Shown: piece by piece, positions 1,522 through 47,402 of the stretch
How the letters are laid out: each line of letters opens with the position of its first letter
Position numbering within the stretch: the stretch's first letter is position 1
Assembly (NCBI GenBank): GCA_965235115.1
Contig: OZ249447.1
Span: 25,730,001-25,794,000, forward strand
DNA: 64,000 nt
Source of the DNA: Laetmonice hystrix
Lineage: Eukaryota
Direction of reading: 5' to 3'
Position numbers and translations under genes: made by a program
The notes under the pieces: generated by a model
Databases searched by the model: none
What the model was told of the DNA's origin: nothing
The model's input: the letters and a program-made list of their open reading frames with translations, nothing else

Positions 1522-1836
1522 CCCCCGCCGTCCATTGCCCCACCCCCGCCGTCCATTCCCCCCACCCCCGCTGTCCGTTCCCCCCACCCCCACCGTCCAT
1601 TCCCCCCACCCCCGCCGTCCATTCCCCCCACCCCCGCTGTCCATTCCCCCCACCCCCGCCGTCCATTCCCCCCACCCCCGCCGTCCATTCCCCCCACCCC
1701 CGCCGTCCATTCCCCCCACCCCCGCCGTCCATTCCCCCCACCCCCGCCGTCCATTCCCCCCACCCCCGCCGTCCATTCCCCCCACCCCCGCCGTCCATTC
1801 CCCCCACCCCCGCCGTCCATTCCCCCCACCCCCACC
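1522..1836. repeat. 22-bp C-rich minisatellite (CCCCGCCGTCCATTCCCCCCAC)n, about 14 copies
   Basis: Period of 22 nt read directly (ccgtcc at 1681 and 1703). It explains the overlapping Pro-rich and Gly-rich ORFs at 1388-2007. The minus strand has G5-G6 runs. Confidence 0.95.
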
Positions 1837-4458
1837 CACCAAGGTTTGTTTATCTGTAAGCTGCTCGTGGTCTTGGCCAATCACGTGACCATGAAGTGTG
1901 TCGGTCGACCTGCTGGATCCGAGCCAGAAAACACCTGCCTCCAACGTACGCGGCGAAAAAAGGCAAGAAATGCCGCTAGGAACAATTGGAGGGGATGTAA
2001 TATATAAGTCCGGGGGGATACGGCGTATATCGGTTGTCCAAACCTTAACGAGTCATGATAAATATCACCCCATGTGGGGGTATCCGTCATATAAAGAAAG
2101 GCACCCCCAAAGCCGGATTGAAATGGTCATGTCCGTTTATTTGACGTGGCGGTTTGAGAGCATTTCTCTCAGGCTATGTACTCACTCGAATTGCTTTTAT
2201 TGTTAGATCCCGACCTTCAACCTTTGGTGGAAGCTTCTCGAAATTTCCAAAGTATCACATATATTGGACAATTACATTTTCTCACCCAAGAGTGATCTTT
2301 TACACATTAATTACACCGCATTCATTGCTACAGTCTGTCTGAATACTACTTTTGTCTGTATCTTAACACTAAAAGAGACAGAAAACTTTTCGCTTTTACA
2401 CTGGGTGATTCAGTTGAGCACTGCGATGGGTTGCAGCAATAGACGCCACCTTGTATGTGACCGGCTTCTCATTTTGGAGGTGCAAATTATTAATGTACAG
2501 TCAGGAAGTCTGGTGCTGCCCTCTGTGACGGCCACCTGAAACATCAGAGGAGGCCTCTCGCGTATTCTCGACAGGCGCGAGAAGGCCATTGGGCGTCTTG
2601 AATGCCGGTAACGACCAGAGAGCGTACACGCGAATAAGAAATCCGGACTTTTCATCAGCCCTCAATTCATTAGGTCTCTTGTACGTATTGACGCCCAGGA
2701 GAAGTCTATTTGCCGAGTGTTCGGCATATGGACACGTAACATGCCATCTTGGAGGCAGTCCGAATGTTAGGGCTGGTCCCCCAACTGTCGTGTGTGAGCC
2801 TCCTAACCTGTTTTTCAGGCGAGCTGTTTTCTGGGAAGCCGTGTGTAGTGTTCGGAGGGACGTGGTCAGGGTCGCGGCCGGTGGAGAGGCCAGGACGACT
2901 CGGGAATGCAGATGTAGCCGAGGCAACTGCTATGAATACAGATTCATATTTCTGATGAATGAAAAGTGACGACAGTTTCAGATGTTGTCGCAGAGGTTCA
3001 GGAAGGAGGACGCTGGAGGTTGGCACGTGATTGATTTCTCAAATAGCCAGGAGCTTACTGTATGAAGATTCTCTGAAAAAGGTTTCTGTTTGATTAAGCA
3101 CTGCTTGTGTTTGTTCACGTGTCCTTGAAATGAGGGTTCAGTTCGCTTTTAGCTTTTTGGCACGAACCTGACAAAAACTGCCGACTTAGTCACCACAGAA
3201 TTAACCTTAGAAAAATATCATGTAACGTGGTGAAGCAGAAAGTAAGTTTTGATTATACGGCTACTTTGATGTCGTACTTTTGGTGTACATATATTATGCA
3301 GTATAATATACCAGCCCCTCCTTGGTGATACTGCCAGAATTGCCTCCCTATACGACAAATTAAACGTACGGCATTTGTCTCTGCGTATAATTGTTCTCCA
3401 GACTCGGTAGAAAGGGGACATTAATTACTGTGCGGTTTCAAATTCAGAAATGGTCTAATTCCAAGGATCACCGCACAACACACAATATAGCTGTGTGATT
3501 TGACAGGTCTCTACCGACTGCACCTTAAACAATGCTATCACGTTCCCTTAGGATGGGTACAACATCAGAGTTGAAATCCGAATCTCTTATCTCGACAGCC
3601 CAGGTATCTGGTGAGATACGTACTCATTCACCGTCCCTAACCACTGCCTTCATACACCATCAAAGGTATCGCCTGGGAGCTTACAATCTAGCTTTCCCAC
3701 AGCGCCTCCGCTTATTTACCAAAAAGTAAGGGCTGTATTGTAACCAGGACCAAATTTACCGTTTCTCTTTGGCCGGCATTCCCACCAGTGGCACTTAGCA
3801 AGCGGCCGTGGCCACCCGGGTGGGTCATACGAAGGTCGACGAAGGTCCTTATTTAGAGGTCTTCACGGGGCCCGACCCCCTACTCCTATAGCCACAGGAC
3901 TTGGAGCTTGTGGCGAGTCACTTAGAACACAGCGCAGTTCTATAGGACGAACTCCGCAAGCCTAATGTAGCAGCGTTCCATTTCCTTGATTATTTGCCAT
4001 AAACTGTGGCGGAGACCTTTGATCTTAGGCGGTGCGGCAGGTAGAATAATTTGTAGCCAGCCCCTTACCTTGTATTATGGAACTCGGAGGCATGCAGTTG
4101 CAGCTTTCAATGGACAGAGTGGCGGACGGAGAAGCAAACGGTTAGATTGAACGTAATAACATTTAAATGCAAGCCATGGCGATTTTTCCTTACTATTTAA
4201 GCATTTCTTTAACGTTTTCCCTGTATAGAATATGCTACGTTGTTTTTTAAGTGTTTTAAAATTTAATTATGAGCTACAGTGTGACCTGGATTTCATTGAG
4301 ACACGCCCCCCCCCCCCCAAATCGTTGATGCTACAGCGTTTTGCTGACGGCATCATTCTGGTTAAAAAATTTGAGCCTAACTTTCTCTGCAGCACAGAGT
4401 CTGGCTTCTCAGGTAACATGTCAAGAGATTGCAGTGAGGACAAGGGAGGCACCTTTAA

Positions 4459-9600: not shown

Positions 9601-12600
9601 GAGCGTCTCACATTTCGCCTGTCAATTTCAGTCCGCTTCACTCTACGAATCGTAGTCATCCTCTCCTGTCATCTCCCAACATTTCTTATGTTAGAAAAAA
9701 TACTTTTCATACTTAAGAAGTATTTAATTGTCCAAAGAAAGACCAATATTTAGAGAGGCGTACGTCGTTCACCCAATGTTAATCCAATGAGGAATTGTGA
9801 CGTAACGGATGCTGCATGTCGCCAGCGATGCCCATTTTACGCTCCCTATAAATGCTAACAGCCCTAACTTGACGATCTCAGACTTCTCAACTTCATAACA
9901 CCTCACCTTTCAAAGTTAAACGACCCTCAAACTTTTTCTCGACTCTGGTCGGCCCTGACGCAGTGGCCGCCCAAACCTAGTGTTTCTGTTGATAGGAAAC
10001 ACTACATTTACAGTTACAGCCGTTTGGTGTGTAAAAGTTCTGTCCTTCAGAAATCCTGTGATTACGTACCATGTGAGCACCCTTCAAAGAACCAGTGATT
10101 ACTGGGTTTGGTGTCTGTCCCCAGGAGGCAGCACGTACACCCAGGTGCAATGGTTATCGACCCAGGAGGATGCATTACATTAATGAGAAATTTGATACCA
10201 CAAGAAACGAGCAAACTGCTGACCTTTTGGTTAAAGTGTACTCCCAGCGCCTGAAGCAGGCAGAGATAAAGTCATGACCGAACATTGATATCCCTTCACG
10301 TCCGGCTCCAACATCTCGACTGGTATGGTGTGACTAATACCGGAAATAGACAGATGTAATCATGACTAGTTACCGGAAATTTGAACATTTAGAAGTAATC
10401 ATGTACCCCATGCACATGGGAATTAAGGAATCTTGTAAATTGGTCGTTCGGGTAAGAAATGCGGTATAGTCCAATCCTTGATATTTCAGATGACAATGAT
10501 TAATGGCATTAAGAAGAAACCTGCATGTAAATTTGTGTAAGCCTACATGCCACTAAGACACAACGTATAGCTTTATTACTTCTGGCCATAGCTCCCTATT
10601 CCATTGTCTTTACCATAATGTAGTTCACACTTGACTGTCTTCCCTTCCCTCAGCCTACCTGCTCCTATTGACCTTCCTATGATTGCCCTATCACCGCCCG
10701 CCATGGTTTAATCGACGAGGTCTGGAGACATATCGATCTGATCAGGACCGTCCTATACAAAGGTTCCGACGTATGATCCAGACAGATACTGTCCGGATCG
10801 ATCAGTCGAGCTAAGCAAGCCACGACTGGTCTACCGTCGGCTTATCTCCGCTCAAAATGTCAGTGGTGTGCGGAATTCCTGGACATGTACACATAATAGA
10901 TAATGTAAATTATATATCACCTATCGCTTATAAATGTTGGGTTATACGAAATGCCATTCATCACTTAAATTTCTCCTACAGTTTCCAATTATGGCAGGTA
11001 CCGTCTCTCCTCAAATTGTAGCCTGGTTTTGACTTGTTCTACATACATTTAACGCGCAACATCCCTTTCTGTTCTTGTATAACGATAATTAAAAAAAGTC
11101 CAATTTATCCAGGACAGGTAAATGAAGATACACAGAGCCATCTGAAGAGAACTCCATATAAGGCTCTTTTACTTGAGTCGCTAACTCCTACTTTATCTCT
11201 TTGATTTCACACGGGTTTTCTGTGGCAATGCGTCCATGCCATGGTGTATTTCTTAAACCCCTTCATATTGTATATCTCTACCACATTTCACGTTCTTTCT
11301 TCACACCGGAGAACGATAGTCCCGTAAATCTTTCACTTATAACAGCTAGAATGTTGTCAATAGATTTGGACTGTAACCCACTCGTTTCTGTGTTTAAAAT
11401 CGATACCATGCACAATAGTTATGAATGGTGACACAGACAGACAAGGGACCTGTCACCCAACCTGGACTCCTTGTTACCATGGGAAGACGTACTGTCGTTA
11501 TCTCCTAAAACATGGCGATCGCCCTCTTTCTCCTCGCCCTCCATTTCTTCCTCCTTTGAGGTTCGTTTGAAGGACTCGAACTGTTTCTTGTTTGTGTACG
11601 TTTCTAGCGATTCGATGTTTTTCCGTGCCCTCTGTGAAATACACCGTGTTAACGACGTTTTACACCGAGTTGGCCGTCTTCCCATGCGTACAGGCAATGA
11701 ACCCTTTCAGTGATGCCCTTTCTCTCGGGTTTCAACGGGGAAATGCTCAGCTGCACAAAAGCCTAATTGAAGCAGATGGAATGTGACCATAATTTTCCTA
11801 TAAATATTCTAAAATATTAAATTATAGTATTTGAATCATGCCATTTATTCTTAAATGCCGACTTTAAAAGCCTTTACCCGGTGGGTGTATTCGTACGGGT
11901 GGTATGGGAGTACAGCGTTTGCGACCTGTGATTTTCTAAATTGTAATTGCATTATGTTATGGCCACTTTCACAGAGAATGTGTCAAATCCTATCGTACAT
12001 ATTACAGTCGATATAAGAACTCTGTCATCCTGTATCCCGTCTACTACTCCACCTATCATGTGTATCAGATATTCTTCCGTCGTCACTTAGGATGTTTTCA
12101 ACTCGGCATGCACTTCAAATCAGCAACTAGGTAAATTCCCAGCCTTCAGAGTGTCAGCCATCTAAGCCACCTCCCCTGATAAGTCCGCGGCGTCTGAACC
12201 TCCTGGAAGGGCTCAGATGAGAGGAAGCCCTTCGGTCTAGCTATCATTAGCAAGTAAAGGCAGAAAAAACGGCCTGTATACGCTGCATGCCCATCACGAA
12301 AGGCTAAGAGTTTTCGTCTCTCACGCAATGTCACACAGATTGGTGATTTAATAGTGCTATCGAGCCGATGTCAGATATCTCAAATGGACGCCTTTAAGGT
12401 CATTTGGGGCGTGGAAAATTGCCAAAGGGGGTCCCCTACAATCACATTCAGTACCTGATTCCCATGTCGCAAACGGCTGGGGGCATAACCCACAAGGCCA
12501 CTGATGATATCCAATAATGAGTGTGTACGGCCTCATCAGAAATGTCTCGGATAGTGTTCGGAGGCGTGCATCCATGTCTTCCTCACCAAATTAACAGGGG

Positions 12601-12794
12601 CTTACCCAATAAAATACCCTGATTTTGGACTGCGATGCAAACAGGACAGATTGTGCCTGGAATAGCAATACGTGACTAACCAGAGCAACTTTTGTGTTAA
12701 CTGGTATTCGTTTCCGCTAAAGCGTATCCTTTCAGTAGTTGTTGTGTCCCAATTCAAAGCAGAGCCTCTCGAAAGCAATAGTTAGATGTACTAA

Positions 12795-12795
<1 letters not shown>

Positions 12796-12833
<38 letters not shown>

Positions 12834-12850
12834 CAGTGCATAGTAGCAGT
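12796..12850. repeat. (AGT)n microsatellite
   Basis: About 12 perfect AGT units followed by degenerate AGC/AGT units. Confidence 0.95.
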
Positions 12851-15800
12851 AATTATTGCCATACTGCTGGGGCAACCACTATCTATACCGAAAGTGAACT
12901 CCGATGTTGTATTTTTCTTATACCAGTTTGTTTTTCTCCCTCCCCTTTAGAAGACGAGTTTTGCTAATGTTGCTCTTTTGAAAGTCTACCGAAGAATTGA
13001 ATGTCTCTAAACTCGTTCATTTCGGCCCTAATTTCCGTGGTTGTGCACTGCCCCAACCATATTATTCCTTTCCAACCCCTGGGTTGACTCCCGTTAGATA
13101 CCCTAGCCATCTGGCTCCCTTCGTATACATGTGTATATCTTTTCTTCTTGGACACCAACTCGATATTGTCCGCGCTATATGATCCTCCAAGTCCGAAGGA
13201 GTTAACACCGGTATGTGTCATTTACAAACATGGAAATAGGTTCGGCTCCCATTTCGGCACCACTGTCTCCTCAAATAAATATAAGGTTATCTCCATTCGC
13301 ATGGCACGCAATGTCTGTGTGTGTATAGGGGGGGGGGGGGGGGTTACAGAAACGGCGAGCCGTTCATGTTTAGTGTGGTCCTGTCTGTGTGCCTATCACA
13401 CATTGCGATATGAGATTGGGAGTCTTTGACCATCCTTTGAAGCAAGAAATTGTATTAGCTTTGTAGTTCGTATTATCGTAGAGATATACGTATTTCGTAT
13501 TTAATAAATACATAAACATGTAGGCTATACGCCACCCTATTTATTTCGTAATATGAATTCCATGAGAGTTTTAGAGAAAGGACGTCCGAATCGTAGTTCT
13601 GTACCATTCAAGTGATCCGTGGCCTACCTGTCCGCATACCTCCACACCAAAGTTAAATACTTGATGAGGAAAAGTTGCCAGTAGACGATGTATCGATTAT
13701 GCTTTATCTAGACTGAATAAAGGAACACGGGGCCACAGTCGTCGACAAAGAGAGGACCTTTTTTTGTTAGAAACTGTGTACCATTCCTGAGCGCCCTATG
13801 GACGGTCTCCCGCTGGATCAAACGGCTCGGTTATTGGCGGACTTTCAGAAGCAGACGAGTTCCTATGGAGAAGAACGCTTGCATCCAGGCCAGCCTATTT
13901 TGCGTGGCTGACATTTGCCATGACACTTACCCCCTTGTCTGACATCCATCCTGACCTGCCTGTCGGCCATTTGCAATAAACCCGATAAAAGACCTTCTGT
14001 TGCGGGTCCTCTGTGTAAGTGGCGCCACAAACTTCGACAAAGCGGAAGTGAATCGCGACCATATGGCTCACTTCTGGCCGCTCTCATATTTTCTCGCTCC
14101 AGGCGAGAGCCTTTGTTAACCGACCGCGTTCTTACGTCAGCAACGTTAAACGGCGCGGGGCGTTTGCGGTTCAACGTCTTCATGGAAGCCTACAGCACAC
14201 TGTAAGAACGATTGCAAACATTGCATAGAAATCCCTAACTGCAGCAATGGTCCGCCGAGAGGACAGCTCTTAAGTCAGACTGTTAACACAACGAAAAGGT
14301 TCATTTGACGTTTTATTTCCAAATAACCATAGACTTTTCCTGAATCTCGCTTCTAACGGCTGCATACTCCGATCGACATTTAGGGAAATGGGGATTTATC
14401 ACCGTCCACACACGGTCCACGCCATTTTATTGTTGACAGGGAGAGAGACCACCAGCATAGCTGTCAAATTTCGCTGCCACAACATTCTACTGTTACGCAA
14501 GGGTTATTTGCAAGGCCTGTTCATAATCATTCACCTTTGCACAATCATTGCACAGTATGAAAGCGGTCCAATACGGATTCGCTTGTCACTGCCGGATCGG
14601 TTTCGCTCACAAGGGACATCAGAGGTAACCTGTGTCACTAGTGGTTGTCGGCAGCCCCCGCTTTGGAATGATATATTGACATCATATGCGACAGAATCGG
14701 CACCAGTCCTTTTCCCATGTAAAAAAAGCAATCGCGCGTCCGACATAGGAGTTCTCATTGAGGAGTCCTAAAACGAGGTGTACACTACGCGAAATCTATA
14801 ATTCATCGACCACAATAGACGGTGAGCCGAAATTATTCCCAGTGATACGGGACCCTCGATAATAAAAGGGTAAAGTGTCAACCTGAGAATACGGACGTTC
14901 TGCCTGAATTGAACATCTCAGCCTGCAGACAAACAGTGTGTACTCCATGCGACAGAATGATGGGTGTGTCGGATCCCCAAAACGGAGTTCAGCAGAATGT
15001 AGGCTTATCAATATTGGAACGAAGGAAATCCGAGGATTATGCATCATCGGCAAATCCTTAGCATTTTGTGTTTTTTCCGTGCCCTATTTTACTTACAGGC
15101 TTTCATCATATGAACGAGTGACCTCAAAGTGGGGCCACAGTGACAGGTTCTAATCAAGAACAGAGAAAGAACAATTCTGCCAGTCACTCTGAGAAGCTGA
15201 ACTCCGAGATGCCTGATATTTAGACGATCCCGTAAACAAATGAAGACTTTCCGATGTAACCAGGTGCATGTGCCTACGTCATCTCGTTAGACAGGCTCCC
15301 AAAGGTCCTCGATTGGTAAAAATCACCAATCACGACGCCGGCAGCCTCTCCTCCGATTGAGGTCAATTTGGGCCTAAGAGCATTGCCAACGGTCAAAACA
15401 CACGCGGGTCTTCACTGGCCCCACCAAATCTGTCTGGAATAAATTCCGAAAAGAATTGTGAGGCCCAGGGCTTAAACACCTCATGTGTTCGTTGTTGGTA
15501 AGACGGCCCCGCAGGATTGAAATGCTTTAGTCGCAATGCGAAACATTGTTACAATCGACCGGCGAAACGGCACGGAGCGTTTCTCAGGCGTGGATAATTT
15601 GCGCGATGTCATGTGTCTACACATTGAGAACGGTAGTTGGCAAATTCGCCCGCCAATCTTGCCTAATCAAGATCCCATTGATTGCAACAGATTCAAGGCC
15701 GACGGACGTCAGAATCTAATGTTAGACATGGTTCGTCCAAGCTCCATGCCTGCTCTTCAAGAGCAGGGTTGATAACTTGGTCTGGAATCTTCGAATCCTG

Positions 15801-36665: not shown

Positions 36666-37989
36666 TATATCGTATGACGTCTCATATCAATGCTAAATAT
36701 TAAAACTGACTTTGGCCCCCCGAATATCCATGTTCGGCTGCACTCTGAGGTGGCAATCTGTCAACACTGGAACTGTACAACGTGCCTGGAAGATGACGGA
36801 TCAGTCATCCTGGAGGGGGAGGGGCGTCAAGTATCGGGCCTGCAAACCGTCCTGCTGGATTGCCTGCCTGGGTCGCCCCCTCCCCTCCTCACCCACCCAC
36901 CTCCTGTATACTCTAAATACCACTCTGTGTCCATTGGAGACCGACGAGTTGTGTATTCGCGCCACTTTAACAGGTCTATACACCCAATGGACGTTCTTCA
37001 CGGTATTAAGTGCATCACAACAGGTGAAAAAATCACGGGCATTTCTAGCCGCGGGGGAGTTAATGATAATGGCGTCAGCACGCCGGCATCTATTGATGTG
37101 AGTAAACTTCTCACTGTTACCTCCCCAACAGTGCATCAGGCAACGGTTAAATCCCAGCGGTTAAATCAACAAACGTCTGTCATTTTAACGATAGACATAA
37201 CGATCGATCCCTTGGCCGTGTGTACCCTCAAGGAACTAGGTAGAAAATGGGGCTTCAGATAGTATCAAGTGTTCTTTCTTGGACTCCAAACGATGCCGGA
37301 GGCCACTCAGCACGGTAATATGTTGGCAAAGAAAGTCAAACCACACGACGTTATATCTAAATTCAGAGTGCCAGGTTTCTCACGGCATTTTCTTCAAAGT
37401 GTGTTCGTACCTTTTTTACTTTTTTTACTTAACCAGTCTCTGTATTTATCACTTTATTACGTCAGCCATAACTGTGTAACGTAAAAAGAAATCTCCAGCA
37501 GGGAAGCTGCCAATAGATTTGTTGCAACAACATAATTTTATTATCATATGGAAATTTCTCCCAGATTAAATTACACCGAGATAATGCAATCATTTGTAAC
37601 ATGCCTTTGAACATCAAGCATTTGCATTCCTTCGAATCACACATTGGAATCCTTTATGTGAGTGTGATTGCGCAATTAACGGCAGTTTAACATACAAGTG
37701 AATGGCAGTGCAGGTTTCCACCATTAATGGAAATTCGCAAGTTGATAATTATCTCTGCCTCTCCCAGATATTTGAAACTATCATTACAGTTCCAGACAAT
37801 TATCTGAAATGCTTCAAACGAGTACTTTGCACTTGTTGCCTGCTTTTTACCTGATCGCGCCATAAAAGGTGCACTCTTAAAACAAATGGTTCGTCAAAGA
37901 ACCCAAAAAGGCCATTACAAATAGGGAACCTTTTTTGGTTCTCCGAAGAACCATGAGAAAGCGTTCTTTAGATGGTTCTTAAAAGGGTT

Positions 37990-38395
37990 CTTCAATGCGT
38001 TTTCAAATGGTTCTTTGTGAAACCTTTAGGAAAGGTTCTCTGAGAAACTCTTTTCTAGGGTTCTTTAGCAGGTTTTCAAATGGTTCTCTGAGAAACTCTT
38101 CCATAGGGTTCTTTAGGAGGTTTTCAAATGGTTCTCTGAGAAACTCTTCCATAGGGTTCTTTAGGAGGTTTTCAAATGGTTCTCTGAGAAACTCTTTCAT
38201 AGGGTTCTTTAGCAGGTTTTCAAATGGTTCTCTGAGAAACTCTTTCATAGGGTTCTTTAGCAGGTTTTAAAGTGGTTCTCTGAGAAACGTTTAAATAGCG
38301 TTCTTTAGTAGGTTTTGAAATGGTTCTTTGTGAATCGATTTAAGAGGGTTCTTATATAGGTTTTGAAATGGTTTCTTAAGATTACATGGTTCTTT
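37990..38395. repeat. 48-bp subterminal tandem array of the CACTA element
   Basis: Unit GGTTTTCAAATGGTTCTCTGAGAAACTCTTCCATAGGGTTCTTTAGGA; period of 48 at 38041 and 38089. It gives the 16-aa periodic ORFs. Confidence 0.9.
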
Positions 38396-38876
38396 AATTT
38401 CCCCATGATTATTTTTTTTTTAAATTAAAAAAAATAGTCAATGGTTATATGTACATCGTTACACATACAACAAATACATCCATATTTGTAAATTCTACAA
38501 TCTTTGATATCATGACAACACTATTTTATTCATGTAATTAAGTGAACAAGAAGTCAACATGTACAACGTAACCACTTTGGCCATTCTTTTATTTTACCAA
38601 AAAACACCAGCATTTTTAAAAGCAAAACGAATGCACAAAAAGTAGATGTAGTAGATGTCATATAGATGCATCACAAATCCTGTCATTCTCTGTATCACAA
38701 TCAACCTGCAGACTGCTTGGGAAATTATTATTCAAAACTGTATGGTAGTATACACATATGCTTGTCATTGGCACATAAAGATACTAATACCGACAAAAGA
38801 AAAATATGATAAATATAAAGGAGGCATCAGTGACCCCTTTCATGGGGGCATTAATGACCACTTGAAAATTAAATGC

Positions 38877-39076
38877 TTAAAAATTCTCGATATATACTAG
38901 GGTGTTTCTCAAGCCCTTGGGGTATTCAATACCATAGATGTAATATAAACTAAATGTGCAGGCCAAGTCCTCGATGGTGTACGAATTCCTGATTAGTACC
39001 ACCTCTTCCCCATCCATCAGAATTCGTCCCGAGTTGGCACCGAGCAGGCGTGGAGACTGGTAGGAGCCAGACAGTG
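38877..39076 (-). pseudogene. Terminal coding exon of a SAMD3-like CACTA accessory gene (fragment)
   Basis: Acceptor ttttctttaaacag precedes CA CTG TCT..., giving (A)LSGSYQSPRLLGANSGRILMDGEEVVLIRNSYTIEDLACTFSLYYIYGIEYPKGLRNTLVYIENF*. This matches the recalled F..YYVFNIEYP...TL.FIQ motif of SAMD3-like proteins. The ORF track does not list it. Confidence 0.65.
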
Positions 39077-39273
39077 CTGTTTAAAGAAAACAATCATAAT
39101 TATTTTGTTTTCTTTATATTAAAATTACCAAATAAAAACGGGTTCAAGACAAGATTCTATTTGAAGGTGTCGGAGCATTAGTATGTTAGGTTTTCTATTC
39201 TAGTTTATTTCTGATAATAATCATCTTTTTGCATTGAAGATTAACATATGCATTCATGTAATTTATTACATAC

Positions 39274-39332
39274 CTGATCCAACGTGAAGAAAAGGCCAGT
39301 TCTCTGGAATCAACATCAGTGCGGCACACTTC
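39274..39332 (-). pseudogene. 59-nt internal exon of the same SAMD3-like gene
   Basis: ttttttag|GAAGTG...GGATCAG|gtatgt encodes KCAALMLIPENWPFLHVGS. Its terminal G joins CA of the next exon to form an in-frame GCA codon. Confidence 0.55.
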
Positions 39333-40486
39333 CTAAAAAATTAACGGGCACACATTAGACTACAATGTTAAGTTGTTGTAATTTTTATATAGGTAAAACC
39401 GAAAAAGCTACAAAAGCAAATGGCATGTCAGCTAGGAGCTGGTACATGGAAGCCAGGACATAGCGCGTGGAACATGGCGTCTCCCACGCACACTGTCCTA
39501 ACACCAAATCCAACATGGCGTCACCCGTGCACGTGGGTGTACAAAAAGTAGTATTATAACCTTTTTGGGGCTGACCAACACTGATAAACCATGGCCGAGT
39601 ATTGAAAGGATTGTGGAGATTAAGGAATAAGTGGATCTGCACACATGGTGTAACAAATAGGGAACCCACCCAGCACATGGCTTTCAGCTGACCACGTGTT
39701 CACAAATGGTGGTGAAACTGGCCTAGCTCACACCAACGACTCGTTGCTCACACACAGAGAGTCCTAGAGTGGCTCCTCCTCAACTTTTCACACAGAAACC
39801 TCCCTCTTCACAATAATCCATTTGAATGTCCATTAATGCACAAAGTAAAATCCGGTTTTGAAAACACAGAAGAATGTCCAGTTAAGGTGGCCTGAGCCTC
39901 AGAGGATGTATACTCCAGGCTGACTAACACGTGAGAGAGAGACTCCAGATGCGGGTGGTATTATGGTAATGAGTGACCTAATTACATGGGGCTTGACTGG
40001 CTAGGTTACACGTCCAGCTGAGCTGGGCTGGTGGCTATTTATAACTGGTCACTCTGACAGCTCAGCCTCCCTAAGTAAAAATACACACTGCAAGAGAGGT
40101 GGTTTTCCCAAACCAAAGATATAACGATTCCCATGATGGCTGTATTTTGGTGGATTTCCCGACATGATTAATGACAATGAAAAGAAAAAGTAAAAGAAAA
40201 CACATACATTTTTCGGGTTACTTTGTACATTTCTATGGATGTATGCACTTTTCATTAAAAATGAATAAACGAAACTCGGTTATAACAAAAAAAAAACGGG
40301 GGTCCCAATCTCCATCAGTGACGTATTGGCCAGATGTCCATTGATCAGATGTCTATATAGGATAATGTCCATAGGTAAAATGCCTCTGTTTGAATGAGAC
40401 AAATTTACAGGTTTGTCTGTCACATACATTTCTGTGGCAATTTAATTCTTTCGTTCAACTCCAGATTGAAAAAGTTAAACACTTAC

Positions 40487-40668
40487 CAAAGAAGGGGTCG
40501 CGACCCTGTATCTTGGAAGTTGCTGTGCAGGAGAGTGTGCTGATCTGAAGATGAATTCTGCAGAAGATGCTTTCCTTTTCTTTGTGGGTTGGTGAAAAAA
40601 TGCGTCGATAGAGCGACTGCTTCTGATCGGAGCGAAAGAACAGGATGTTTGAACTACGACGCTTTATA
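40487..40668 (-). promoter_or_regulatory. Candidate internal promoter and first exon of the CACTA gene
   Basis: TATAAA on the minus strand at 40668-40663, followed about 175 nt later by a consensus donor TTG|GTAAGT (exon end 40487). Orientation matches the downstream exons. Confidence 0.3.
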
Positions 40669-41764
40669 CCTTGTCCAGCCCCCGCCTTGTCTTATAGTCC
40701 ACATGTATGGGCCACGTGGGCTGAAGGACAAGGCCACCCTGGTTTCGGCGCTTGGACACGTGGCGGAGACCTCATTGGCTTGGGATACCCCATAACCAAC
40801 GATCCTAACGTGCTATGACCTTGGTAGGCCTATATACAATTAGTTAACAAGTGTATCCCCACAGGATTTGCCCCGTAGGACCCAGGCATGGATGAAAACC
40901 GGACAGAAGCATTTTTTGTGGATAACTCTAAAATGTATAATTTGAAAGTCACAAAAACACGATAATACTAAAGCTAGGTCTGATGGACAGCCACCCACAA
41001 AATAGCTTCTGAATAGCATTCATAACCGCAGAGATTTTAGGCTTTGACAAAATGTGTCAGTCAATGCCCCACTCTCCCCAACACGTTTTCTGGAAACCTG
41101 GTTAGGAATAGAAAAATCCTATTTGACATTAAATTCAAGTAAAACAGGCACACACAAGACCATTTATAAAATGGTTCTTCATAAACTGAAGAACCTTTTA
41201 CCTAATTAAAGAACCTATTTTAACTGAAGAACCTACGTTCCTTTGCCAAGAACCCTCTGCCTAGCCAAAGAACGCATTTCGAGCTGAAGAACCAAATGGT
41301 TCTTTGAAGAACTTTGGTTCCTCATGATGAACCCTTTCGGAACCGTCATTTTTAAGAGTGTGGGTGAAGCCAGAGCTTTATGAAACCAATGAAAGGCGTT
41401 TCTGGTGTAAACTGTTGTTGGTGTTAGATAGAGACGGTCTTGGATGAGGAGAACACTCTCATACCTCTCTCCACGGAGGAGGAGACTGGTGAGTAGTCGA
41501 CAAGGTCGTGTCGAGGATCATAGAGACTCCCGATAAATCACGGTGGGCGGCCATGTTTTCACGATCGGTTTCAAGTACATGAATCGGAAGGATAATCGAG
41601 TAGTGATTAACGTAAAAATATAAACGTGAACGTGGCGTTTCGTTAGTATACTGAAAGCAGAGTAGATACCATTGGGGGTCCAGGGGGCCAGAGGGCCCGG
41701 GCTCCCCTCAGATTTTCCTTTTCTTTCTTGTTTTTTTTTGGCCTGGAAGGATCAATATTATTAT

Positions 41765-43544
41765 TAAACTCGTCATTGGACTCATGTAAAATCATGCGGT
41801 TTCATAGAGTATCCTACATCGATAACATGGGTCGATTAACTCGTCATTGGACACATGTAAAATCACGTGGTTTCATAGAGTATCCTATATCGATAACATG
41901 AGTCGATTAACTCGTCATTGGACACATGTAAAATCACGTGGTTTCATAGAGTATCCTATATCGATGACATGAGTCGATTAACTCGTCATTGGACTCATGT
42001 AAAATCATGCGGTTTCATCGCGTCTCCTATATCGATAACATGAGTCGATTAACTCGTCATTGGACTCATGTAAAATCATGTGGTTTCATAGAGTATCCTA
42101 TATCGATAACATGAGTCGATTAACTCGTCATTGGACACATGTAAAATCACGTGGTTTCATAGAGTATCCTATATCGATAACATGAGTCGATTAACTCGTC
42201 ATTGGACACATGTAAAATCACGTGGTTTCATAGACTATCCTATATCGATAACATGAGTCGATTAACTCGTCATTGGACTCATGTAAAATCATGTGGTTTC
42301 ATAGAGTATCCTATATCGATAACATGGGTCGATTAACTCGTCATTGGACTCATGTAAAATCACGTGGTTTCATAGACTATCCTATATCGATGACATGAGT
42401 CGATTAAACTCGTCATTGGACTCATGTAAAATCATGCGGTTTCATAGAGTATCCTATATCGATAACATGGGTCGATTAACTCGTCATTGGACTCATGTAA
42501 AATCATGCGGTTTCATAGAGTATCCTATATCGATAACATGGGTCGATTAACTCGTCATTGGACTCATGTAAAATCATGCGGTTTCATAGACTATCCTATA
42601 TCGATGACATGAGTCGATTAAACTCGTCATTGGACTCATGTAAAATCATGCGGTTTCATAGAGTATCCTATATCGATAACATGGGTCGATTAACTCGTCA
42701 TTGGACTCATGTAAAATCATGCGGTTTCGTAGAGTATCCTATATCGATAACATGGGTCGATTAACTCGTCATTGGACTCATGTAAAATCATGCGGTTTCA
42801 TAGACTATCCTATATCGATAACATGGGTCGATTAACTCGTCATTGGACTCATGTAAAATCATGCGGTTTCATAGAGTATCCTACATCGATAACATGGGTC
42901 GATTAACTCGTCATTGGACTCATGTAAAATCATGCGGTTTCATCGCGTCTCCTATATCGATAACATGAGTCGATTAACTCGTCATTGGACTCATGTAAAA
43001 TCATGTGGTTTCATAGAGTATCCTATATCGATAACATGAGTCGATTAACTCGTCATTGGACTCATGTAAAATCATGTGGTTTCATAGAGTATCCTATATC
43101 GATAACATGGGTCGATTAACTCGTCATTGGACTCATGTAAAATCATGCGGTTTCATAGACTATCCTATATCGATAACATGGGTCGATTAACTCGTCATTG
43201 GACTCATGTAAAATCATGCGGTTTCATAGAGTATCCTACATCGATAACATGGGTCGATTAACTCGTCATTGGACTCATGTAAAATCATGCGGTTTCATAG
43301 AGTATCCTATATCGATAACATGAGTCGATTAACTCGTCATTGGACTCATGTAAAATCATGCGGTTTCATAGACTATCCTATATCGATGACATGAGTCGAT
43401 TAAACTCGTCATTGGACTCATGTAAAATCATGCGGTTTCGTACAGTATCCTATATCGATAACATGAGTCGATTAACTCGTCCTTGGACTCATGTAAAATC
43501 ATGCGGTTTCATAGAGTATCCTATATCGATAACATGGGTCGATT
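41765..43544. repeat. 71-bp satellite/minisatellite, about 25 copies
   Basis: Unit TTAACTCGTCATTGGACTCATGTAAAATCATGCGGTTTCATAGAGTATCCTATATCGATAACATG(A/G)GTCGA. Copies are highly homogeneous, and the array explains the duplicated 68-aa ORFs. Confidence 0.97.
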
Positions 43545-44528
43545 TTATCACTGAAGTCCTGATGAGATCAAGACCAGTTTTTTTAAAGAATTTAAGTTCA
43601 GAAAACCGGGCCCATGTGTTCTGTGGAGGGATGAGATCAACACATTCCCACGTTTCTCTGAGCTTTTATTACAGCCGGCAAGAGCTGCAACATTATCATC
43701 AGAATCTCAGTTGTTTTTTAACATGGCGGTCCATGCGGCAGCCGTATGGATTCACTACTAATGGCCTTCTTCTCAGACATCTGTTTTCGGGCGCTGAGTG
43801 AATCGGGACAGGGTCTTTCATGCCGGCTGCCCTTTTTGCCCCCATTTTTGCCCAGGGGGAAGATAAGCAACGCTTCAACATGGCTGATTGCAATCAGCGT
43901 AACGGATCTGATGGGGGTTCACATGAAGCTAGATCTCGCCAGGTGATGTTGCTGCTGTCATTCAGACAAGGCTACAAGTTTACGTCGGAAACACCATATA
44001 TGTTATAGAAATAATGTGTATACCCTTCAACAACGGCAAATGTGGGGACATGGAAATAAAATAAATCTTGCGACCTGTGCTTTGGTCCCTTGAGGTTGTA
44101 ATCGAAGTTAAGGCGGTGCAAACCATGAGGACAGAGATGAACTATCTGTTGAATGTCTGCATCGGCAGCGTCTTACTGAATTCTGTAGCGTTTCTCTCAG
44201 CGACACATTCTCGTAACGTTGTGGCGCCGTCTAGCGGCCGAATGGTGCTCCGCTGTCTGCCTCTTAATACCATGTCACGTGACGCTCGCACGGTACTTCC
44301 GCTGCAGCAAACAACACCTTCGCGTCGCATAATGACCAGACGACAGTGCTTCATCCGGGGCTTCTCGATCCGCGAGATCCTGGCGTTTAGTCAGTGAGCT
44401 AACGTATATATCAAAGCTCGCAGTAGTTTCTTCTCAGATGGTTAAATACAGTTTTGAGCATATATGGAGAGAACAGCGTCAGCCAGTGCAGGGGTTGGCA
44501 GCTTTGCCTGGTGATACCACTAATCGCG

Positions 44529-47402
44529 ATGATGCTACATCTGGTCGTGTCTGAACATGGTGATACCCATCCTACTACAGTATTAACATTCACTATCACA
44601 TGCTACAATTGCAGGGGCCTTCCTAAGACCCGTGATAACCTATTACTCCGTCCTGAATTGTGTGATCTGCTTAGATTTAGTAACATTGTTTGCCTACAGG
44701 AGACATGGTACAGTACCCAGGATCTGGCCTGTCTGAATAATCTGGACCTGAATTTCCACGGTGGTGGAGTATCTACCACTGACTACAGTAATCGTGTTGT
44801 AGCTGGGCACCCACCAGGTGGAGTGGCTATTCTGTGGCATAAGGATCTTGATCAGTACATCAGACCTGTGGACCTTAATGTTGATTGGTGCTATGCTATC
44901 GAGATATCTGTGGATCGTAGAAAACTCTATGTCTTCAATGTATACATGCCCTATCAGTGCCCTGAGAATGAGGAAAAATATATTAACAATCTTGGTGCTA
45001 TCAGTGCCTTCATAGAAGAGCTTGACAGCTCCTGCTATACACTGGTTGGAGATTGGAATGCTAATTTAAATAATGTTGGTACTTCACTGTTCGCCAATCA
45101 CATGTTGAACTTTTGTACGGAAAATGATCTCACTGTGTCTAGTCGCGTGCTGCTTCCCGCGGGCAGCTATACTTATGTTAGTGAGAGCTGGAACTCAACA
45201 TCTTGGCTGGATCACGCTGTCAGTAGCATGGATTTCCATAATATTATTAACAATCTGACTATACATTATGATCTCACTGACGTGGACCACATACCCATCT
45301 CCGTGAATGTTGACCTCCAGCTTGTTCCTGAGTTAACCAGTGTTACAAATACCTGTTCCCCTAAGGTAAAATGGGAAGCCCTTTCCGAGGATGACATAAA
45401 ACAGTACCGCGCCACTACAGATAGGAAACTTGCCAGCGTTACGATCCCCTGTGTCACCGGATGTACGGACGTGTCGTGTGACAACCCTGATCATATAAAT
45501 CAGGTTAAACAATTCTATGACAATATTATTGCATGTCTAGTTAAGGCTGGAGAGGAGGTGTTAGGAAACTCCCGCAGGAAGAGGATGTTTAACAAACCGG
45601 GGTGGAATGATTATGTTGCAGAACTCTACAATGCCTCTAAAGAGGCTTATAGAATGTGGGCTAGTGGTGGCAAGCCCAGGACTGGTCCTCTGCATGATAT
45701 ATATATACATAGCAGAGCTAGGTGTAAATATGCTATTCGCTTTATCAAATCTAATGAAAATATGTTACGTCGGGAGTCTCTTGCAAAAAAGCTTTCTCAG
45801 CGTGACTACAAGTCGTTCTGGAAAGAAATTAAACTGATGAACAACTGTAAAACTCCTCTTCCCACTACAATTGACGGTGTCACAGGTGAAGTGCCCATTG
45901 CTGATCTCTGGGGCAAACACTTTTCAGAACTTCTAAACTGCGTACGTGGTAAGGGTGACTGGAGACATAAAATTGATCGGAACTTTGATTTTCAAGATGT
46001 GCGCCTTGACAGCTCAGAAATAGGATCTGCTATTAACAGTCTCGAGTCCAACAAGGCATGTGGTCAAGACGGTGTGTATGCTGAGCACCTTAAATACGCC
46101 TCTGATCGCTTACCTCAGCTGCTAGGCCTATGTATAACTAGCCTATTTGTCCATGGTGTGTTGCCTGACTCAATGTTAGCAGTTGTTCTCGTGCCTGTGA
46201 TCAAAGATAAAACGGGTAGAATCACTTCTAAGGATAATTACAGACCCATTGCGCTTGCAAGTATTGTCAGTAAAGTTGTTGAAATTATTTTGTTGGAACG
46301 CATGTCTATGTATCTCGAGACTAGGCCTAATCAGTTTGGTTTCAAGAAGAAGCTTGGCACGGATATGTGTATCTATGTCCTGAAGGAGGTAGTGGATGCT
46401 TATCGCACACTAAACGGTAGCGTCTTTGCATGCTATTTAGATGCAAGTAAGGCTTTTGATAGAGTGAACCATGGTGTTCTGTTTGAAAAACTTGTCAGTA
46501 GAGGGGTACCTGGATACATTGTCAGAATCCTGATCTTCTGGTACTCTAACCAACAAATGTCTGTTAGGTGGGGAAATGCCTACTCTGGACACTTTAATGT
46601 GTCATGTGGGGTTAGACAGGGTGGAATACTCTCTCCATATTTGTTCAATATCTATGTTGATGACCTAAGTGTTCAATTAAACAAGTGTAATACAGGCTGC
46701 ACGATCAACAGCTTCCTTCTTAATCACCTAATGTATGCAGACGACCTAGTTATCTTTGCCCCCTCTGCTGCTGGGCTTGTTATGCTTCTCCGTGTATGTG
46801 AAAGATTTGGTCTTGAGCATGATGTGAAGTTCAACACAAAGAAGAGTGCTGTGATGGTGTTCAGGTCTAAATCCCTGAGAGGTGTGACTTTGCCTGACCA
46901 CAATCTGTATGGGGAAGCCTTAAAAGTAGTTGATAGGTTCAAATACCTTGGACATTGTGTGGCAAATGACTTATCTGATGATGATGACATAGGTAGACAA
47001 GTTAAAAAGCTATATGCCCAGGGTAACTCGATACTTCGAAAATTCCATATGTGTAGTTGGGACGTCAAACTTACTCTGTTCCGTGCGTATTGTTCTCCCC
47101 TGTACACGGCACAATTGTGGTGGAACTTTAAGAGAGCCTCCATAAACAAACTACAAGTTTCTTACCACAACTTACTCAAGATGTTTCTGGGGCTACCTAA
47201 GTATGAAAGCACAAGTATGCTCTGCACTATACTTGATGTCCAGTGCTGCCAGGCAGTTATCCGTAACCTTGTGCATCGATTCATGTGTAGGCTTGATGCC
47301 TCTGTAAATGACATTATTGTTTCGCTACTTGCTACCAGTATTTCTTATGTCTCCAGAATAAGGAGGCATTGGCTTAACTTGCTACACATTGGCTCTGGTT
47401 AG
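44529..47402 (+). CDS. LINE ORF2: apurinic-like endonuclease plus reverse transcriptase (957 aa from the first ATG; frame open from 44427)
   Basis: EN motifs YNCRGL, VCLQETW, GGVAIL, NVYMP, VGDWNAN, LDH, DH. RT motifs KACGQDG, NYRPIAL, QFGFK, LDASKAFDRV, GVRQGGILSPYLFNIY, YADD, KYLG. No stops or frameshifts. Confidence 0.95.
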   Translation: MMLHLVVSEHGDTHPTTVLTFTITCYNCRGLPKTRDNLLLRPELCDLLRFSNIVCLQETWYSTQDLACLNNLDLNFHGGGVSTTDYSNRVVAGHPPGGVAILWHKDLDQYIRPVDLNVDWCYAIEISVDRRKLYVFNVYMPYQCPENEEKYINNLGAISAFIEELDSSCYTLVGDWNANLNNVGTSLFANHMLNFCTENDLTVSSRVLLPAGSYTYVSESWNSTSWLDHAVSSMDFHNIINNLTIHYDLTDVDHIPISVNVDLQLVPELTSVTNTCSPKVKWEALSEDDIKQYRATTDRKLASVTIPCVTGCTDVSCDNPDHINQVKQFYDNIIACLVKAGEEVLGNSRRKRMFNKPGWNDYVAELYNASKEAYRMWASGGKPRTGPLHDIYIHSRARCKYAIRFIKSNENMLRRESLAKKLSQRDYKSFWKEIKLMNNCKTPLPTTIDGVTGEVPIADLWGKHFSELLNCVRGKGDWRHKIDRNFDFQDVRLDSSEIGSAINSLESNKACGQDGVYAEHLKYASDRLPQLLGLCITSLFVHGVLPDSMLAVVLVPVIKDKTGRITSKDNYRPIALASIVSKVVEIILLERMSMYLETRPNQFGFKKKLGTDMCIYVLKEVVDAYRTLNGSVFACYLDASKAFDRVNHGVLFEKLVSRGVPGYIVRILIFWYSNQQMSVRWGNAYSGHFNVSCGVRQGGILSPYLFNIYVDDLSVQLNKCNTGCTINSFLLNHLMYADDLVIFAPSAAGLVMLLRVCERFGLEHDVKFNTKKSAVMVFRSKSLRGVTLPDHNLYGEALKVVDRFKYLGHCVANDLSDDDDIGRQVKKLYAQGNSILRKFHMCSWDVKLTLFRAYCSPLYTAQLWWNFKRASINKLQVSYHNLLKMFLGLPKYESTSMLCTILDVQCCQAVIRNLVHRFMCRLDASVNDIIVSLLATSISYVSRIRRHWLNLLHIGSG

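What the first reader, a model, noticed from the sequence alone, without database searches (positions are those of the whole stretch)
37870..41362. CACTA/EnSpm element with no visible transposase that retains a spliced SAMD3-like accessory gene
Seen in sequence: CACTCTTAAAA TIRs, a TG 2-bp TSD and subterminal GGTTC/GAACC arrays. On the minus strand are a TATA box (40668), a GTAAGT donor (40487), a 59-nt exon (39332-39274), a terminal exon (39076-38877) joined in phase by canonical AG/GT sites, and AATAAA at 38530-38525. The spliced peptide is KCAALMLIPENWPFLHVGSALSGSYQSPRLLGANSGRILMDGEEVVLIRNSYTIEDLACTFSLYYIYGIEYPKGLRNTLVYIENF*. From recall, this C-terminal motif characterises SAMD3-like proteins associated with animal EnSpm elements, whose function is unknown. 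Inference: an internally deleted element that kept its promoter, splice phase and polyA signal could still express a truncated accessory protein or regulate the family in trans. The ORF track misses it entirely.
Basis: partly seen in the sequence, partly recalled or inferred. Interest (0 to 1): 0.8.

Follow-up and report, generated by a model that had tools for sequence, protein, structure and literature searches.

The report
Young deleted transposon with SAMD3-like relic
This is one copy of a young, still polymorphic 3.5-kb DNA transposon that has lost its transposase and keeps only a decaying, though still spliced, tail of a SAMD3-like gene that elsewhere sits next to EnSpm-type transposases.

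Summary
Window 37872-41360 is one of at least 10 near-full copies (16-18 ends) of a 3.4-3.5 kb non-autonomous cut-and-paste transposon. It has 11-bp CACTCTTAAAA inverted ends, a 2-bp target duplication (TA in 8 of 10 copies, TG here) and GGTTC-rich subterminal arrays. Public contigs from the same species hold the empty site with a single TG, so the insertion is polymorphic. One contig from an RNA-like run shows the intron 39077-39273 spliced out.

The terminal exon is homologous to the C-terminal domain of SAMD3 and of proteins NCBI names SAMD3-like, by both profile and predicted fold. In this genome and two others, that exon lies 1.4-6 kb downstream, on the same strand, of Transposase_21/DUF4218-type (EnSpm/CMC) open frames.

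The "gene", however, is a relic:
- Only about 65 codons are homologous.
- A family-wide deletion of about 300 bp removed the last helix and the native stop.
- The window's stop is a private CAA>TAA change.
- Half the copies carry stops or a frameshift, and dN/dS does not differ from neutral.
- The proposed exon 1 and TATA box have no support.

No autonomous partner with these ends was found, so the EnSpm assignment is inferred. The scan flagged another copy of this family earlier (s1-319994). Verdict: an ordinary element. The link between SAMD3-like exons and EnSpm-type transposases is the part worth following.

The parts
37870..37871 (.). Left copy of the 2-bp target-site duplication (TG)
   Evidence: The empty-site contig joining 37868 to 41360 leaves a single TG.
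37872..37882 (+). Left terminal inverted repeat, CACTCTTAAAA
   Evidence: pair I9. The same end is found in 14 exact 21-mers across the genome and in all 10 bounded copies.
37883..38033 (+). Left subterminal region with GGTTC/GAACC motifs
   Evidence: It is 93-95% identical in 15 other genomic places.
38034..38373 (+). 48-bp tandem array, 7.1 units, each unit with two GGTTC motifs
   Evidence: 91% matches, score 496.
38525..38530 (-). AATAAA string, a possible poly(A) signal. Unverified.
   Evidence: Present in all copies. The RNA-like run X4 shows no depth in the bins spanning 38410-38897.
38877..39076 (-). Terminal exon, a relic of the SAMD3-like C-terminal domain. The stop at 38879-38877 is private to this copy. 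Homology ends at ...IE(N/K)F.
39077..39273 (-). Intron (GT..AG on the minus strand), removed in RNA
   Evidence: Joint 39076->39274 in X4 only (depth 21, 31 letters on the shorter side). It is absent from the deep runs X1-X3.
39274..39332 (-). 59-nt exon, open in frame with the terminal exon. No detectable homology.
   Evidence: Its 3' end is joined to the terminal exon in the X4 contig.
39490..40120 (+). Fragment (75-91% identical) of a 1075-bp LTR-like direct repeat family, ending exactly at that repeat's end. Also present in the older copy L031.
40487..40668 (-). No ATG in any frame, and no RNA support.
   Evidence: X4 contigs lie at 40619-40905, and the bin 40484-40605 has no depth.
41131..41349 (+). 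Right subterminal region with GAACC/GGTTC motifs
   Evidence: It is 97-99% identical in 17 other genomic places.
41350..41360 (+). Right terminal inverted repeat, TTTTAAGAGTG
41361..41362 (.). Right copy of the 2-bp target-site duplication (TG)

Best explanation
Window 37872-41360 is one copy of a young, non-autonomous cut-and-paste DNA transposon family.

It most likely arose by internal deletion from an EnSpm/CMC-type autonomous element. That parent would have carried a transposase (Transposase_21 plus a DUF4218-like region) followed, on the same strand, by a SAMD3-like gene. The deletion removed the transposase and most of the SAMD3-like gene. What remains is the two ends, an old LTR-like fragment, and the last two exons of the gene.

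Movement depends on a transposase supplied in trans. That enzyme would recognise the 11-bp CACTCTTAAAA ends and probably the oppositely oriented GGTTC repeats. It cuts the target with a 2-bp stagger and prefers TA.

The remaining exons are still transcribed from some copies, and their intron is still removed. The coding sequence is not maintained, so any peptide (80 aa here, about 111 aa in other copies, from the ATG in exon 2) is most likely a non-functional by-product.

**Shown:** family structure, target duplications, insertion polymorphism, splicing of one intron, homology of the terminal exon, neutral decay, and linkage of SAMD3-like exons with EnSpm-type frames at other loci.

**Inferred:** descent from such an element, the role of the GGTTC repeats, the identity of the mobilising enzyme, and that run X4 is RNA.
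For: **Family and ends**
- At least 10 copies of 3372-3505 bp, 94-98% identical, share the same ends in different flanks. There are 18 right ends and 16 left ends in total.
- The 2-bp duplication is TA in 8 copies, TT in 1 and TG in 1. It is TA in all 6 bounded copies of a sister subfamily whose ends read CACTCTTAGAA.
- GGTTC/GAACC is enriched and inverted at the two ends.

**Recent insertion and splicing**
- An empty-site contig skips exactly 3491 bp in three runs.
- The joint 39076->39274 appears only in the small run X4 and is absent from the deep runs of the same sample.

**Homology of the terminal exon**
- phmmer found 7 short animal ORFs sharing a Y-x-x-G-V-E-Y-P-K-G-L-K-N-T motif.
- The profile hits a protein named SAMD3-like at E 3.3e-7, with hhalign probability 98.5%. 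A second SAMD3-like protein was found through P0013.
- The AlphaFold model has pLDDT 79.6. Mouse and human SAMD3 residues 430-506 rank first and third. Three named SAMD3(-like) clusters and many unnamed proteins match at their C-terminal ends.

**Linkage to EnSpm-type transposases**
- In the Hoplias locus, transposase-like ORFs lie 1.5 kb upstream of the SAMD3-like exons.
- At six loci in this genome the exon lies 3-6 kb downstream, on the same strand, of open frames of 395-908 aa homologous to that ORF.
- The same order is seen in a third genome.
- These ORFs are EnSpm-type: Transposase_21 at 33.6 bits directly upstream of a homologue, Transposase_21 at 31.1 bits directly upstream at three loci on contig 12, DUF4218 at 26.7 bits, and Plavaka at E 7e-4.

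**Decay**
- Older copies L031 and L032 keep the true C-terminal tail, while the 3.5-kb family lacks about 300 bp there.
- There are 3 independent nonsense changes, a 5-bp deletion and a private stop among 10 copies. Changes split 13 non-synonymous to 7 synonymous, giving dN/dS about 0.55 on tiny counts.
- The terminal exon is no better conserved than the introns: 2.5% against 0.9% divergence.

**Literature**
- The CMCT clade has CA..TG ends and 2-5 bp duplications, and includes EnSpm-like lineages with TA duplications (PMC12730594).
Against: - No transposase with these ends exists in the assembly. All ends pair at about 3.5 kb or stand alone.
- No paralogue of the exon closer than 38% identity lies outside the family. 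The parent is therefore unobserved.
- A strong TA preference with a 2-bp duplication is also typical of ISL2EU/PHIS-type and Tc1/mariner elements. Canonical EnSpm makes 3-bp duplications.
- No CAC..GTG inverted ends were found around the Hoplias locus or the third-genome locus.
- The Pfam support for the transposase type is near or below cut-off at most loci.
- The kind of run X4 is not on record, and only one contig supports splicing.
- dN/dS of 0.55 does not exclude weak constraint.
Confidence: 0.68

Rival explanations
1. The deleted element still has a working promoter, splice sites and poly(A) signal. It expresses a truncated SAMD3-like protein, or an RNA, that acts in trans on the family, for example by binding the GGTTC repeats or by poisoning the full-length protein.
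For: - The intron 39077-39273 is spliced in an RNA-like run.
- The proposed exon 1 has no ATG in any frame, so the first ATG of the model mRNA is in exon 2 and is in frame with the domain.
- Five of 10 copies keep an open frame of about 111 codons.
- dN/dS of 0.55 is below 1.
Against: - The family-wide deletion removes the third helix and the native stop of the domain.
- Half the copies carry a stop or frameshift, and this copy is cut short by a private stop.
- The exon is more diverged than the flanking intron.
- dN/dS is not distinguishable from neutral on 20 events.
- RNA-like contigs lie across and upstream of the TATA box, and the exon-1 bin has no depth.
- The expressed contig does not come from this copy.
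- The function of the domain itself is unknown, and it has no relative in the PDB.
Confidence: 0.12
2. The element belongs to another superfamily with 2-bp TA duplications (PHIS/ISL2EU-like, or a Tc1/mariner-type derivative). It merely captured a fragment of a SAMD3-like gene, as Pack-type elements capture host exons. The relic would then say nothing about its transposase.
For: - TA is the duplication in 14 of 16 bounded copies of the two subfamilies.
- No CMC transposase shares its ends.
- The element also carries a foreign LTR-like fragment, so it can hold unrelated DNA.
- PHIS relatives with TA duplications are described (PMC12730594).
Against: - The ends are CAC..GTG, as in the CMCT clade.
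- Non-TA duplications (TG, confirmed by the empty site, and TT) argue against Tc1/mariner.
- The captured piece is precisely the 3' end of the gene, lying next to one end of the element with its 3' flank. That is what an internal-deletion derivative would look like.
- This gene is repeatedly linked to EnSpm-type transposases.
Confidence: 0.17
3. It is not a mobile element. It is a dispersed segmental duplicate or a host gene fragment.
For: None beyond the absence of a transposase.
Against: - There are precise shared boundaries in at least 10 unrelated flanks, each with a 2-bp duplication.
- There is a precise empty allele.
- There are inverted ends and inverted subterminal motifs.
Confidence: 0.01

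Closest known systems
Non-autonomous En/Spm (CACTA) deletion derivatives such as dSpm/I of maize, within the CMC (CACTA-Mirage-Chapaev) superfamily
   Same: - The ends start CAC..GTG, and the target duplication is short.
- Many short subterminal repeats run in opposite orientation at the two ends.
- An internal deletion removed the transposase.
- In the parent type, a second gene lies downstream of the transposase frame on the same strand, as TNPA exons lie downstream of the TNPD frames in En/Spm. That comparison rests on established knowledge and was not tested here.
   Different: - The duplication is 2 bp with a TA preference, not 3 bp.
- The fifth base of the end is C, not A or G.
- The downstream gene is SAMD3-like, not TNPA.
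- No autonomous partner was found in this genome.
ESTA (EnSpm-like transposons with TA duplications) and Mirage/Plavaka lineages of the CMCT clade (PMC12730594)
   Same: - 2-bp duplications, TA in ESTA.
- CA..TG-type ends.
- One linked transposase frame gives a weak Plavaka hit.
   Different: ESTA and Plavaka are fungal. No transposase is available here to place the family in a tree.
SAMD3 (mouse Q8C4H2, human Q8N6K7) and proteins that NCBI names SAMD3-like in fish
   Same: The C-terminal domain of about 80-95 residues (three strands and three helices in the model) matches by profile and by predicted fold. It is always at the very C-terminus.
   Different: - The element holds only about 65 codons of it and lacks the last helix.
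- There is no SAM domain and no upstream part of the protein.
- Identity to mammalian SAMD3 is only 21-22% over the structural alignment.

Membership tests
CACTA/EnSpm (CMC superfamily) transposon | Encodes, or is demonstrably mobilised by, a CMC-type DDE transposase (Transposase_21 type) | tested here: not met
   - No Pfam domain was found in any ORF of the element.
- None of the transposase-type proteins tested matched any held copy or locus.
- No longer element with the same ends exists in the assembly.
- The link is indirect only, through the SAMD3-like relic.
CACTA/EnSpm (CMC superfamily) transposon | Termini 5'-CACT(A/G)...-3' / CA..TG | tested here: met
   The ends read CACTC...GAGTG in all bounded copies. 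The CMCT clade shares CA..TG ends.
CACTA/EnSpm (CMC superfamily) transposon | Short target-site duplication (3 bp canonical for EnSpm; 2-5 bp across CMCT) | tested here: inconclusive
   The duplication is 2 bp, mostly TA. That lies within the CMCT range but is not the canonical 3 bp, and it is shared with PHIS/ISL2EU-type elements.
CACTA/EnSpm (CMC superfamily) transposon | Arrays of short subterminal repeats in inverted orientation at both ends | tested here: met
   There are 22 GGTTC/GAACC motifs in the left 529 bp, 10 in the right 230 bp and 2 in the central 2730 bp. There is also a 48-bp array.
SAMD3 / SAMD3-like proteins | C-terminal domain with the ...Y-x-x-G-V-E-Y-P-K-G-L-K-N-T...F-L-E-K-Y... 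motif | tested here: met
   - The profile hits a named SAMD3-like protein at E 3.3e-7, with hhalign probability 98.5%.
- Foldseek's top hit is mouse SAMD3 residues 430-506, probability 0.99.
- In this family the domain is truncated after ...IEKF.
SAMD3 / SAMD3-like proteins | N-terminal SAM domain and the central region of the protein | tested here: not met
   - No SAM or any other Pfam domain was found in the element's ORFs.
- tblastn with the longer relatives P0013 and P0015 finds only the terminal exon.
- Exon 2 shows no significant similarity.
Tc1/mariner | Strict TA target and a DD(E/D) Tc1/mariner transposase | tested here: not met
   TG and TT duplications occur. The TG one is confirmed by the empty allele. 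No such transposase is present.

The most novel reading that the evidence does not exclude
The SAMD3-like protein may be a regular second gene of an animal EnSpm/CMC lineage. It would sit downstream of the transposase much as TNPA does in maize En/Spm.

Vertebrate SAMD3, whose molecular function I know no account of, would then be a domesticated copy of it, or its donor. Spliced transcripts from deleted elements like this one could feed truncated forms of that protein, or RNA, back into control of the family.
Probability: 0.35. Interest if true: 0.6.

Novelty: new member of a known kind. Interest (0 to 1): 0.4.

Why it matters
The copy itself is an ordinary, decaying non-autonomous transposon. 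Two things give it some value.

- The family is young: copies differ by 1-2.5%, and this insertion is still polymorphic. A cut-and-paste system with CACT ends and a 2-bp, TA-preferring target may therefore have been active recently in this animal.
- The relic led to a reproducible gene order, an EnSpm-type transposase followed by SAMD3-like exons, seen in three genomes. The SAMD3 C-terminal domain also recurs at the C-terminus of many unnamed proteins in the AlphaFold cluster library. My paper searches found nothing linking SAMD3 to transposons. If the link holds, it gives a testable origin and a candidate activity (end-binding or transposition control) for a vertebrate gene family.

Tried and rejected
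**Searches that gave nothing**
- Pfam on the terminal exon found nothing meaningful; the best hit was DUF4812 at E 0.18.
- Rfam on 37000-42500 and on the LTR-like loci gave no match.
- phmmer against 1.84 billion representatives returned only short orphan ORFs as true hits. The long hits (P0001, P0002, P0004, P0008) are bacterial or cadherin-like repeat proteins and are spurious.
- Cluster look-up gave no names.
- Foldseek against the PDB gave no match at E 0.001 or better.
- Paper searches for SAMD3 with transposon, SAMD3-like, and EnSpm with sterile alpha motif gave nothing relevant.

**Search for an autonomous partner**
- A 21-mer search for the end found a sister subfamily with CACTCTTAGAA ends. 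It is 1.25-1.7 kb long, or carries long satellite arrays of roughly 52-bp period. None of the 16 loci fetched holds a transposase.
- Searches with each subterminal region found no end pair wider than about 3.5 kb.
- Scans for CAC..GTG inverted ends around the Hoplias and third-genome composite loci found none.

**Weak or failed leads**
- A weak tblastn hit of a Hoplias transposase ORF to the extra 1 kb of the older copy L031 (E 0.003) contains stops and looks like chance.
- Exon 2 against SAMD3-like proteins gave shuffle p of 0.58-0.97.
- The upstream half of P0013 found nothing in this genome.
- Exon 1 as a coding exon: it has no ATG in any frame and no homologue. My first translation of it was one base out of frame and should be ignored.
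- No convincing host exon spans the insertion site.

**Limits**
- No run on record as RNA holds the element.

Full report
**1. What is in the sequence**

The stretch 37872-41360 (3489 bp) starts with CACTCTTAAAA and ends with its reverse complement. TG flanks it on both sides. The five-base motif GGTTC/GAACC is concentrated at the two ends:
- 22 in the left 529 bp, mostly GGTTC.
- 10 in the right 230 bp, mostly GAACC.
- 2 in the central 2730 bp. The window average is 1.9 per kb.

Part of the left array is a 48-bp tandem repeat of 7.1 units at 38034-38373.

The AATAAA, TATAAA and GTAAGT strings are all present, the last one base off the stated position.

**2. It is a repeated, mobile, recently inserted element**

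The window's genome (627 Mb in 35 contigs) holds at least 10 copies of 3372-3505 bp at 94-98% identity. Their flanks are unrelated. In all, 18 right ends and 16 left ends were found.

Every bounded copy has a 2-bp duplication: TA in eight, TT in one and TG in the window copy. A sister subfamily with CACTCTTAGAA ends is 1.25-1.7 kb long, and some members carry long satellite arrays. All six of its bounded copies have TA.

Mismatch-only divergence among the ten copies is 0.3-2.6%, depending on the region.

Contigs of three public runs of the same species join 37868 directly to 41360. They skip 3491 bp and leave a single TG. The insertion is therefore polymorphic or heterozygous, and the duplication is real. 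No convincing host exon spans the site.

**3. The "gene"**

A contig of a fourth, small run from the same sample joins 39076 to 39274, with GT..AG on the minus strand. The three deep runs do not show this joint. The small run therefore behaves as RNA, and the intron is really removed. The kind of that run is not on record, so this is an inference.

The contig carries T at 39050 and C at 39070. Those are the letters of the other copies, so the transcript seen does not come from this copy.

- The RNA-like contigs lie at 40619-40905, across and upstream of the TATA box.
- They give no depth in the bin 40484-40605, which holds most of the proposed exon 1, and none in the bins spanning 38410-38897, the proposed 3' UTR. 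Coverage is thin, however.
- The proposed exon 1 has no ATG in any frame. The first ATG of the model mRNA is in exon 2, in frame.

**4. The coding sequence is a relic**

All nine other copies have CAA and read on for 31 unrelated codons.
- Two older, more divergent copies keep a different and conserved tail after ...IEKF. These are L031 (4.4 kb) and L032 (truncated). The tail is about 24 residues ending in the native stop.
- The 3.5-kb family lacks about 300 bp there. In the structure model, that tail is the third helix of the domain.
- Among the ten copies there are three independent nonsense changes, one 5-bp deletion, one 3-bp insertion and the private stop. Five of ten copies are disrupted.
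- Distinct changes split 13 non-synonymous (3 of them stops) to 7 synonymous, over 196 non-synonymous and 59 synonymous sites. dN/dS is about 0.55, not distinguishable from neutral on these counts.
- The terminal exon is more diverged (2.5%) than the intron beside it (0.9%).
- Exon 2 has no detectable similarity to any relative. tblastn with longer relatives finds only the terminal exon.

**5. What the terminal exon is homologous to**

Pfam has no family for it.

An exhaustive phmmer search found seven short orphan ORFs with a shared motif, Y-x-x-G-V-E-Y-P-K-G-L-K-N-T-x-x-F-L-E-K-Y. The longer hits were spurious repeat proteins.

A profile of these ORFs plus the intact L032 exon hit a protein that NCBI names SAMD3-like (Hoplias malabaricus, E 3.3e-7). 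hhalign gives 98.5% probability. A second SAMD3-like protein (Brachyhypopomus gauderio) is 53% identical to relative P0013.

An AlphaFold model of the intact exon has pLDDT 79.6, with three strands and three helices. Its structural matches are:
- Mouse SAMD3 residues 430-506 of 520 rank first among 550,129 Swiss-Prot models, and human SAMD3 residues 431-504 rank third. Probabilities are 0.99 and 0.91, and E-values are weak.
- In the cluster library it matches, at probability 1.00, the C-terminal ends of many unnamed proteins and of three clusters named SAMD3 or SAMD3-like.
- There is no solved structural relative.

**6. Link to EnSpm-type transposases**

In the Hoplias locus, three open frames lie 1.5 kb upstream of the SAMD3-like exons on the same strand. 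One contains D-L-M-H-D-V-L-E-G.

Homologues of the largest frame occur in the window's genome as open frames of 395-925 aa. At six loci, a hit to the exon profile lies 3-6 kb downstream on the same strand. I estimate the chance of this, given about 60 loci of each kind in 627 Mb, at roughly 3 in 10,000 per locus.

The same order is seen in a third genome, GCA_977065575.1: a 549-aa frame, then P0022, then SAMD3-like exons at 11977-14266.

These frames are of the EnSpm/CMC type:
- On a JGI contig, a Transposase_21 frame (E 3e-8, above the cut-off) is directly followed by a homologue.
- At three loci on contig 12 of this genome, Transposase_21 (31.1 bits) lies directly upstream of the homologous segments.
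- Four of six homologues give DUF4218 hits at the same profile positions, the best at 26.7 bits against a cut-off of 27.
- The 549-aa frame gives weak Plavaka and Transposase_21 hits.

**7. What remains inferred**

No element with this family's ends carries a transposase. No close paralogue of the exon lies outside the family.

The assignment to EnSpm/CMC therefore rests on three things: the CAC..GTG ends, the subterminal arrays, and the relic of a gene that keeps company with EnSpm-type transposases.

The 2-bp, TA-preferring duplication lies within the 2-5 bp range of the CMCT clade, which includes EnSpm-like lineages with TA duplications. It is also typical of PHIS/ISL2EU relatives (PMC12730594). 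The TG and TT duplications exclude a strict TA integrase of the Tc1/mariner kind.

**8. Verdict**

- It is a transposase-less element with a spliced remnant of a SAMD3-like gene.
- The remnant is a decaying fragment, not a retained accessory gene.
- The promoter model is unsupported, and the superfamily is inferred.

The scan's first stage noted another copy of this family on another piece of the genome (s1-319994). That note repeats the same reading and is not independent evidence.

As a single element this is ordinary. The reproducible pairing of SAMD3-like exons with EnSpm-type transposases is the lead worth following.

Noticed in passing
window 39490-40120; L029 2657-3731 and 5463-6537; L030 1990-3064 and 4861-5935: The centre of the element holds an old fragment (75-91% identical) of a 1075-bp repeat. 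Elsewhere that repeat occurs as pairs of direct repeats 2.8 kb or about 7.5 kb apart, 99.9-100% identical within a pair. It looks like the LTRs of a very young retroelement, with a TATA-like box near the repeat's 3' end. Rfam gave no hit, and no clear primer-binding site or polypurine tract was seen.
   Followed up: partly
genome contigs C1, C3, C4, C6, C7, C10, C12, C13, C29, C30 (loci L013-L028): A sister subfamily has CACTCTTAGAA ends and TA duplications. Its members are either 1.25-1.7 kb elements or carry long internal tandem arrays of roughly 52-bp period, up to several kb. This suggests satellite expansion inside a non-autonomous transposon.
   Followed up: partly
window 44454-47402 (+): There is a 982-aa open frame with endonuclease (Exo_endo_phos) and reverse transcriptase (RVT_1) domains. 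It is a LINE-type retrotransposon with an intact-looking ORF2, 3 kb from the element.
   Followed up: partly
own genome, e.g. C2:41639665-41640309, C19:24492420-24493064, C3:1340922-1341566, C2:8107442-8108101, C18:109110-109769, C19:18148070-18148729: Sets of places give identical scores and uninterrupted open frames of 808 or 814 aa homologous to the EnSpm-type frame. These are possibly intact, recently active autonomous CMC elements. Separate Transposase_21 lineages with open frames of 847-1074 aa also exist.
   Followed up: no
own genome, rows with E 7.1e-4: Eleven places give the same score to the SAMD3-like exon profile, each with the same single TAA inside. This is another multi-copy family carrying a degenerate copy of the exon.
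   Followed up: no
L034 (Logan contig of SRR22402095) 1524-3278 (-): An uninterrupted 584-aa gamma-glutamyltranspeptidase frame lies convergent to the intron-less SAMD3-like ORF P0013. The contig may be a transcript assembly or a chimera.
   Followed up: no
window 37837: The empty-allele contig of run X1 carries A instead of T here, while those of X2 and X3 carry T. This is a small flank polymorphism near the insertion site.
   Followed up: no
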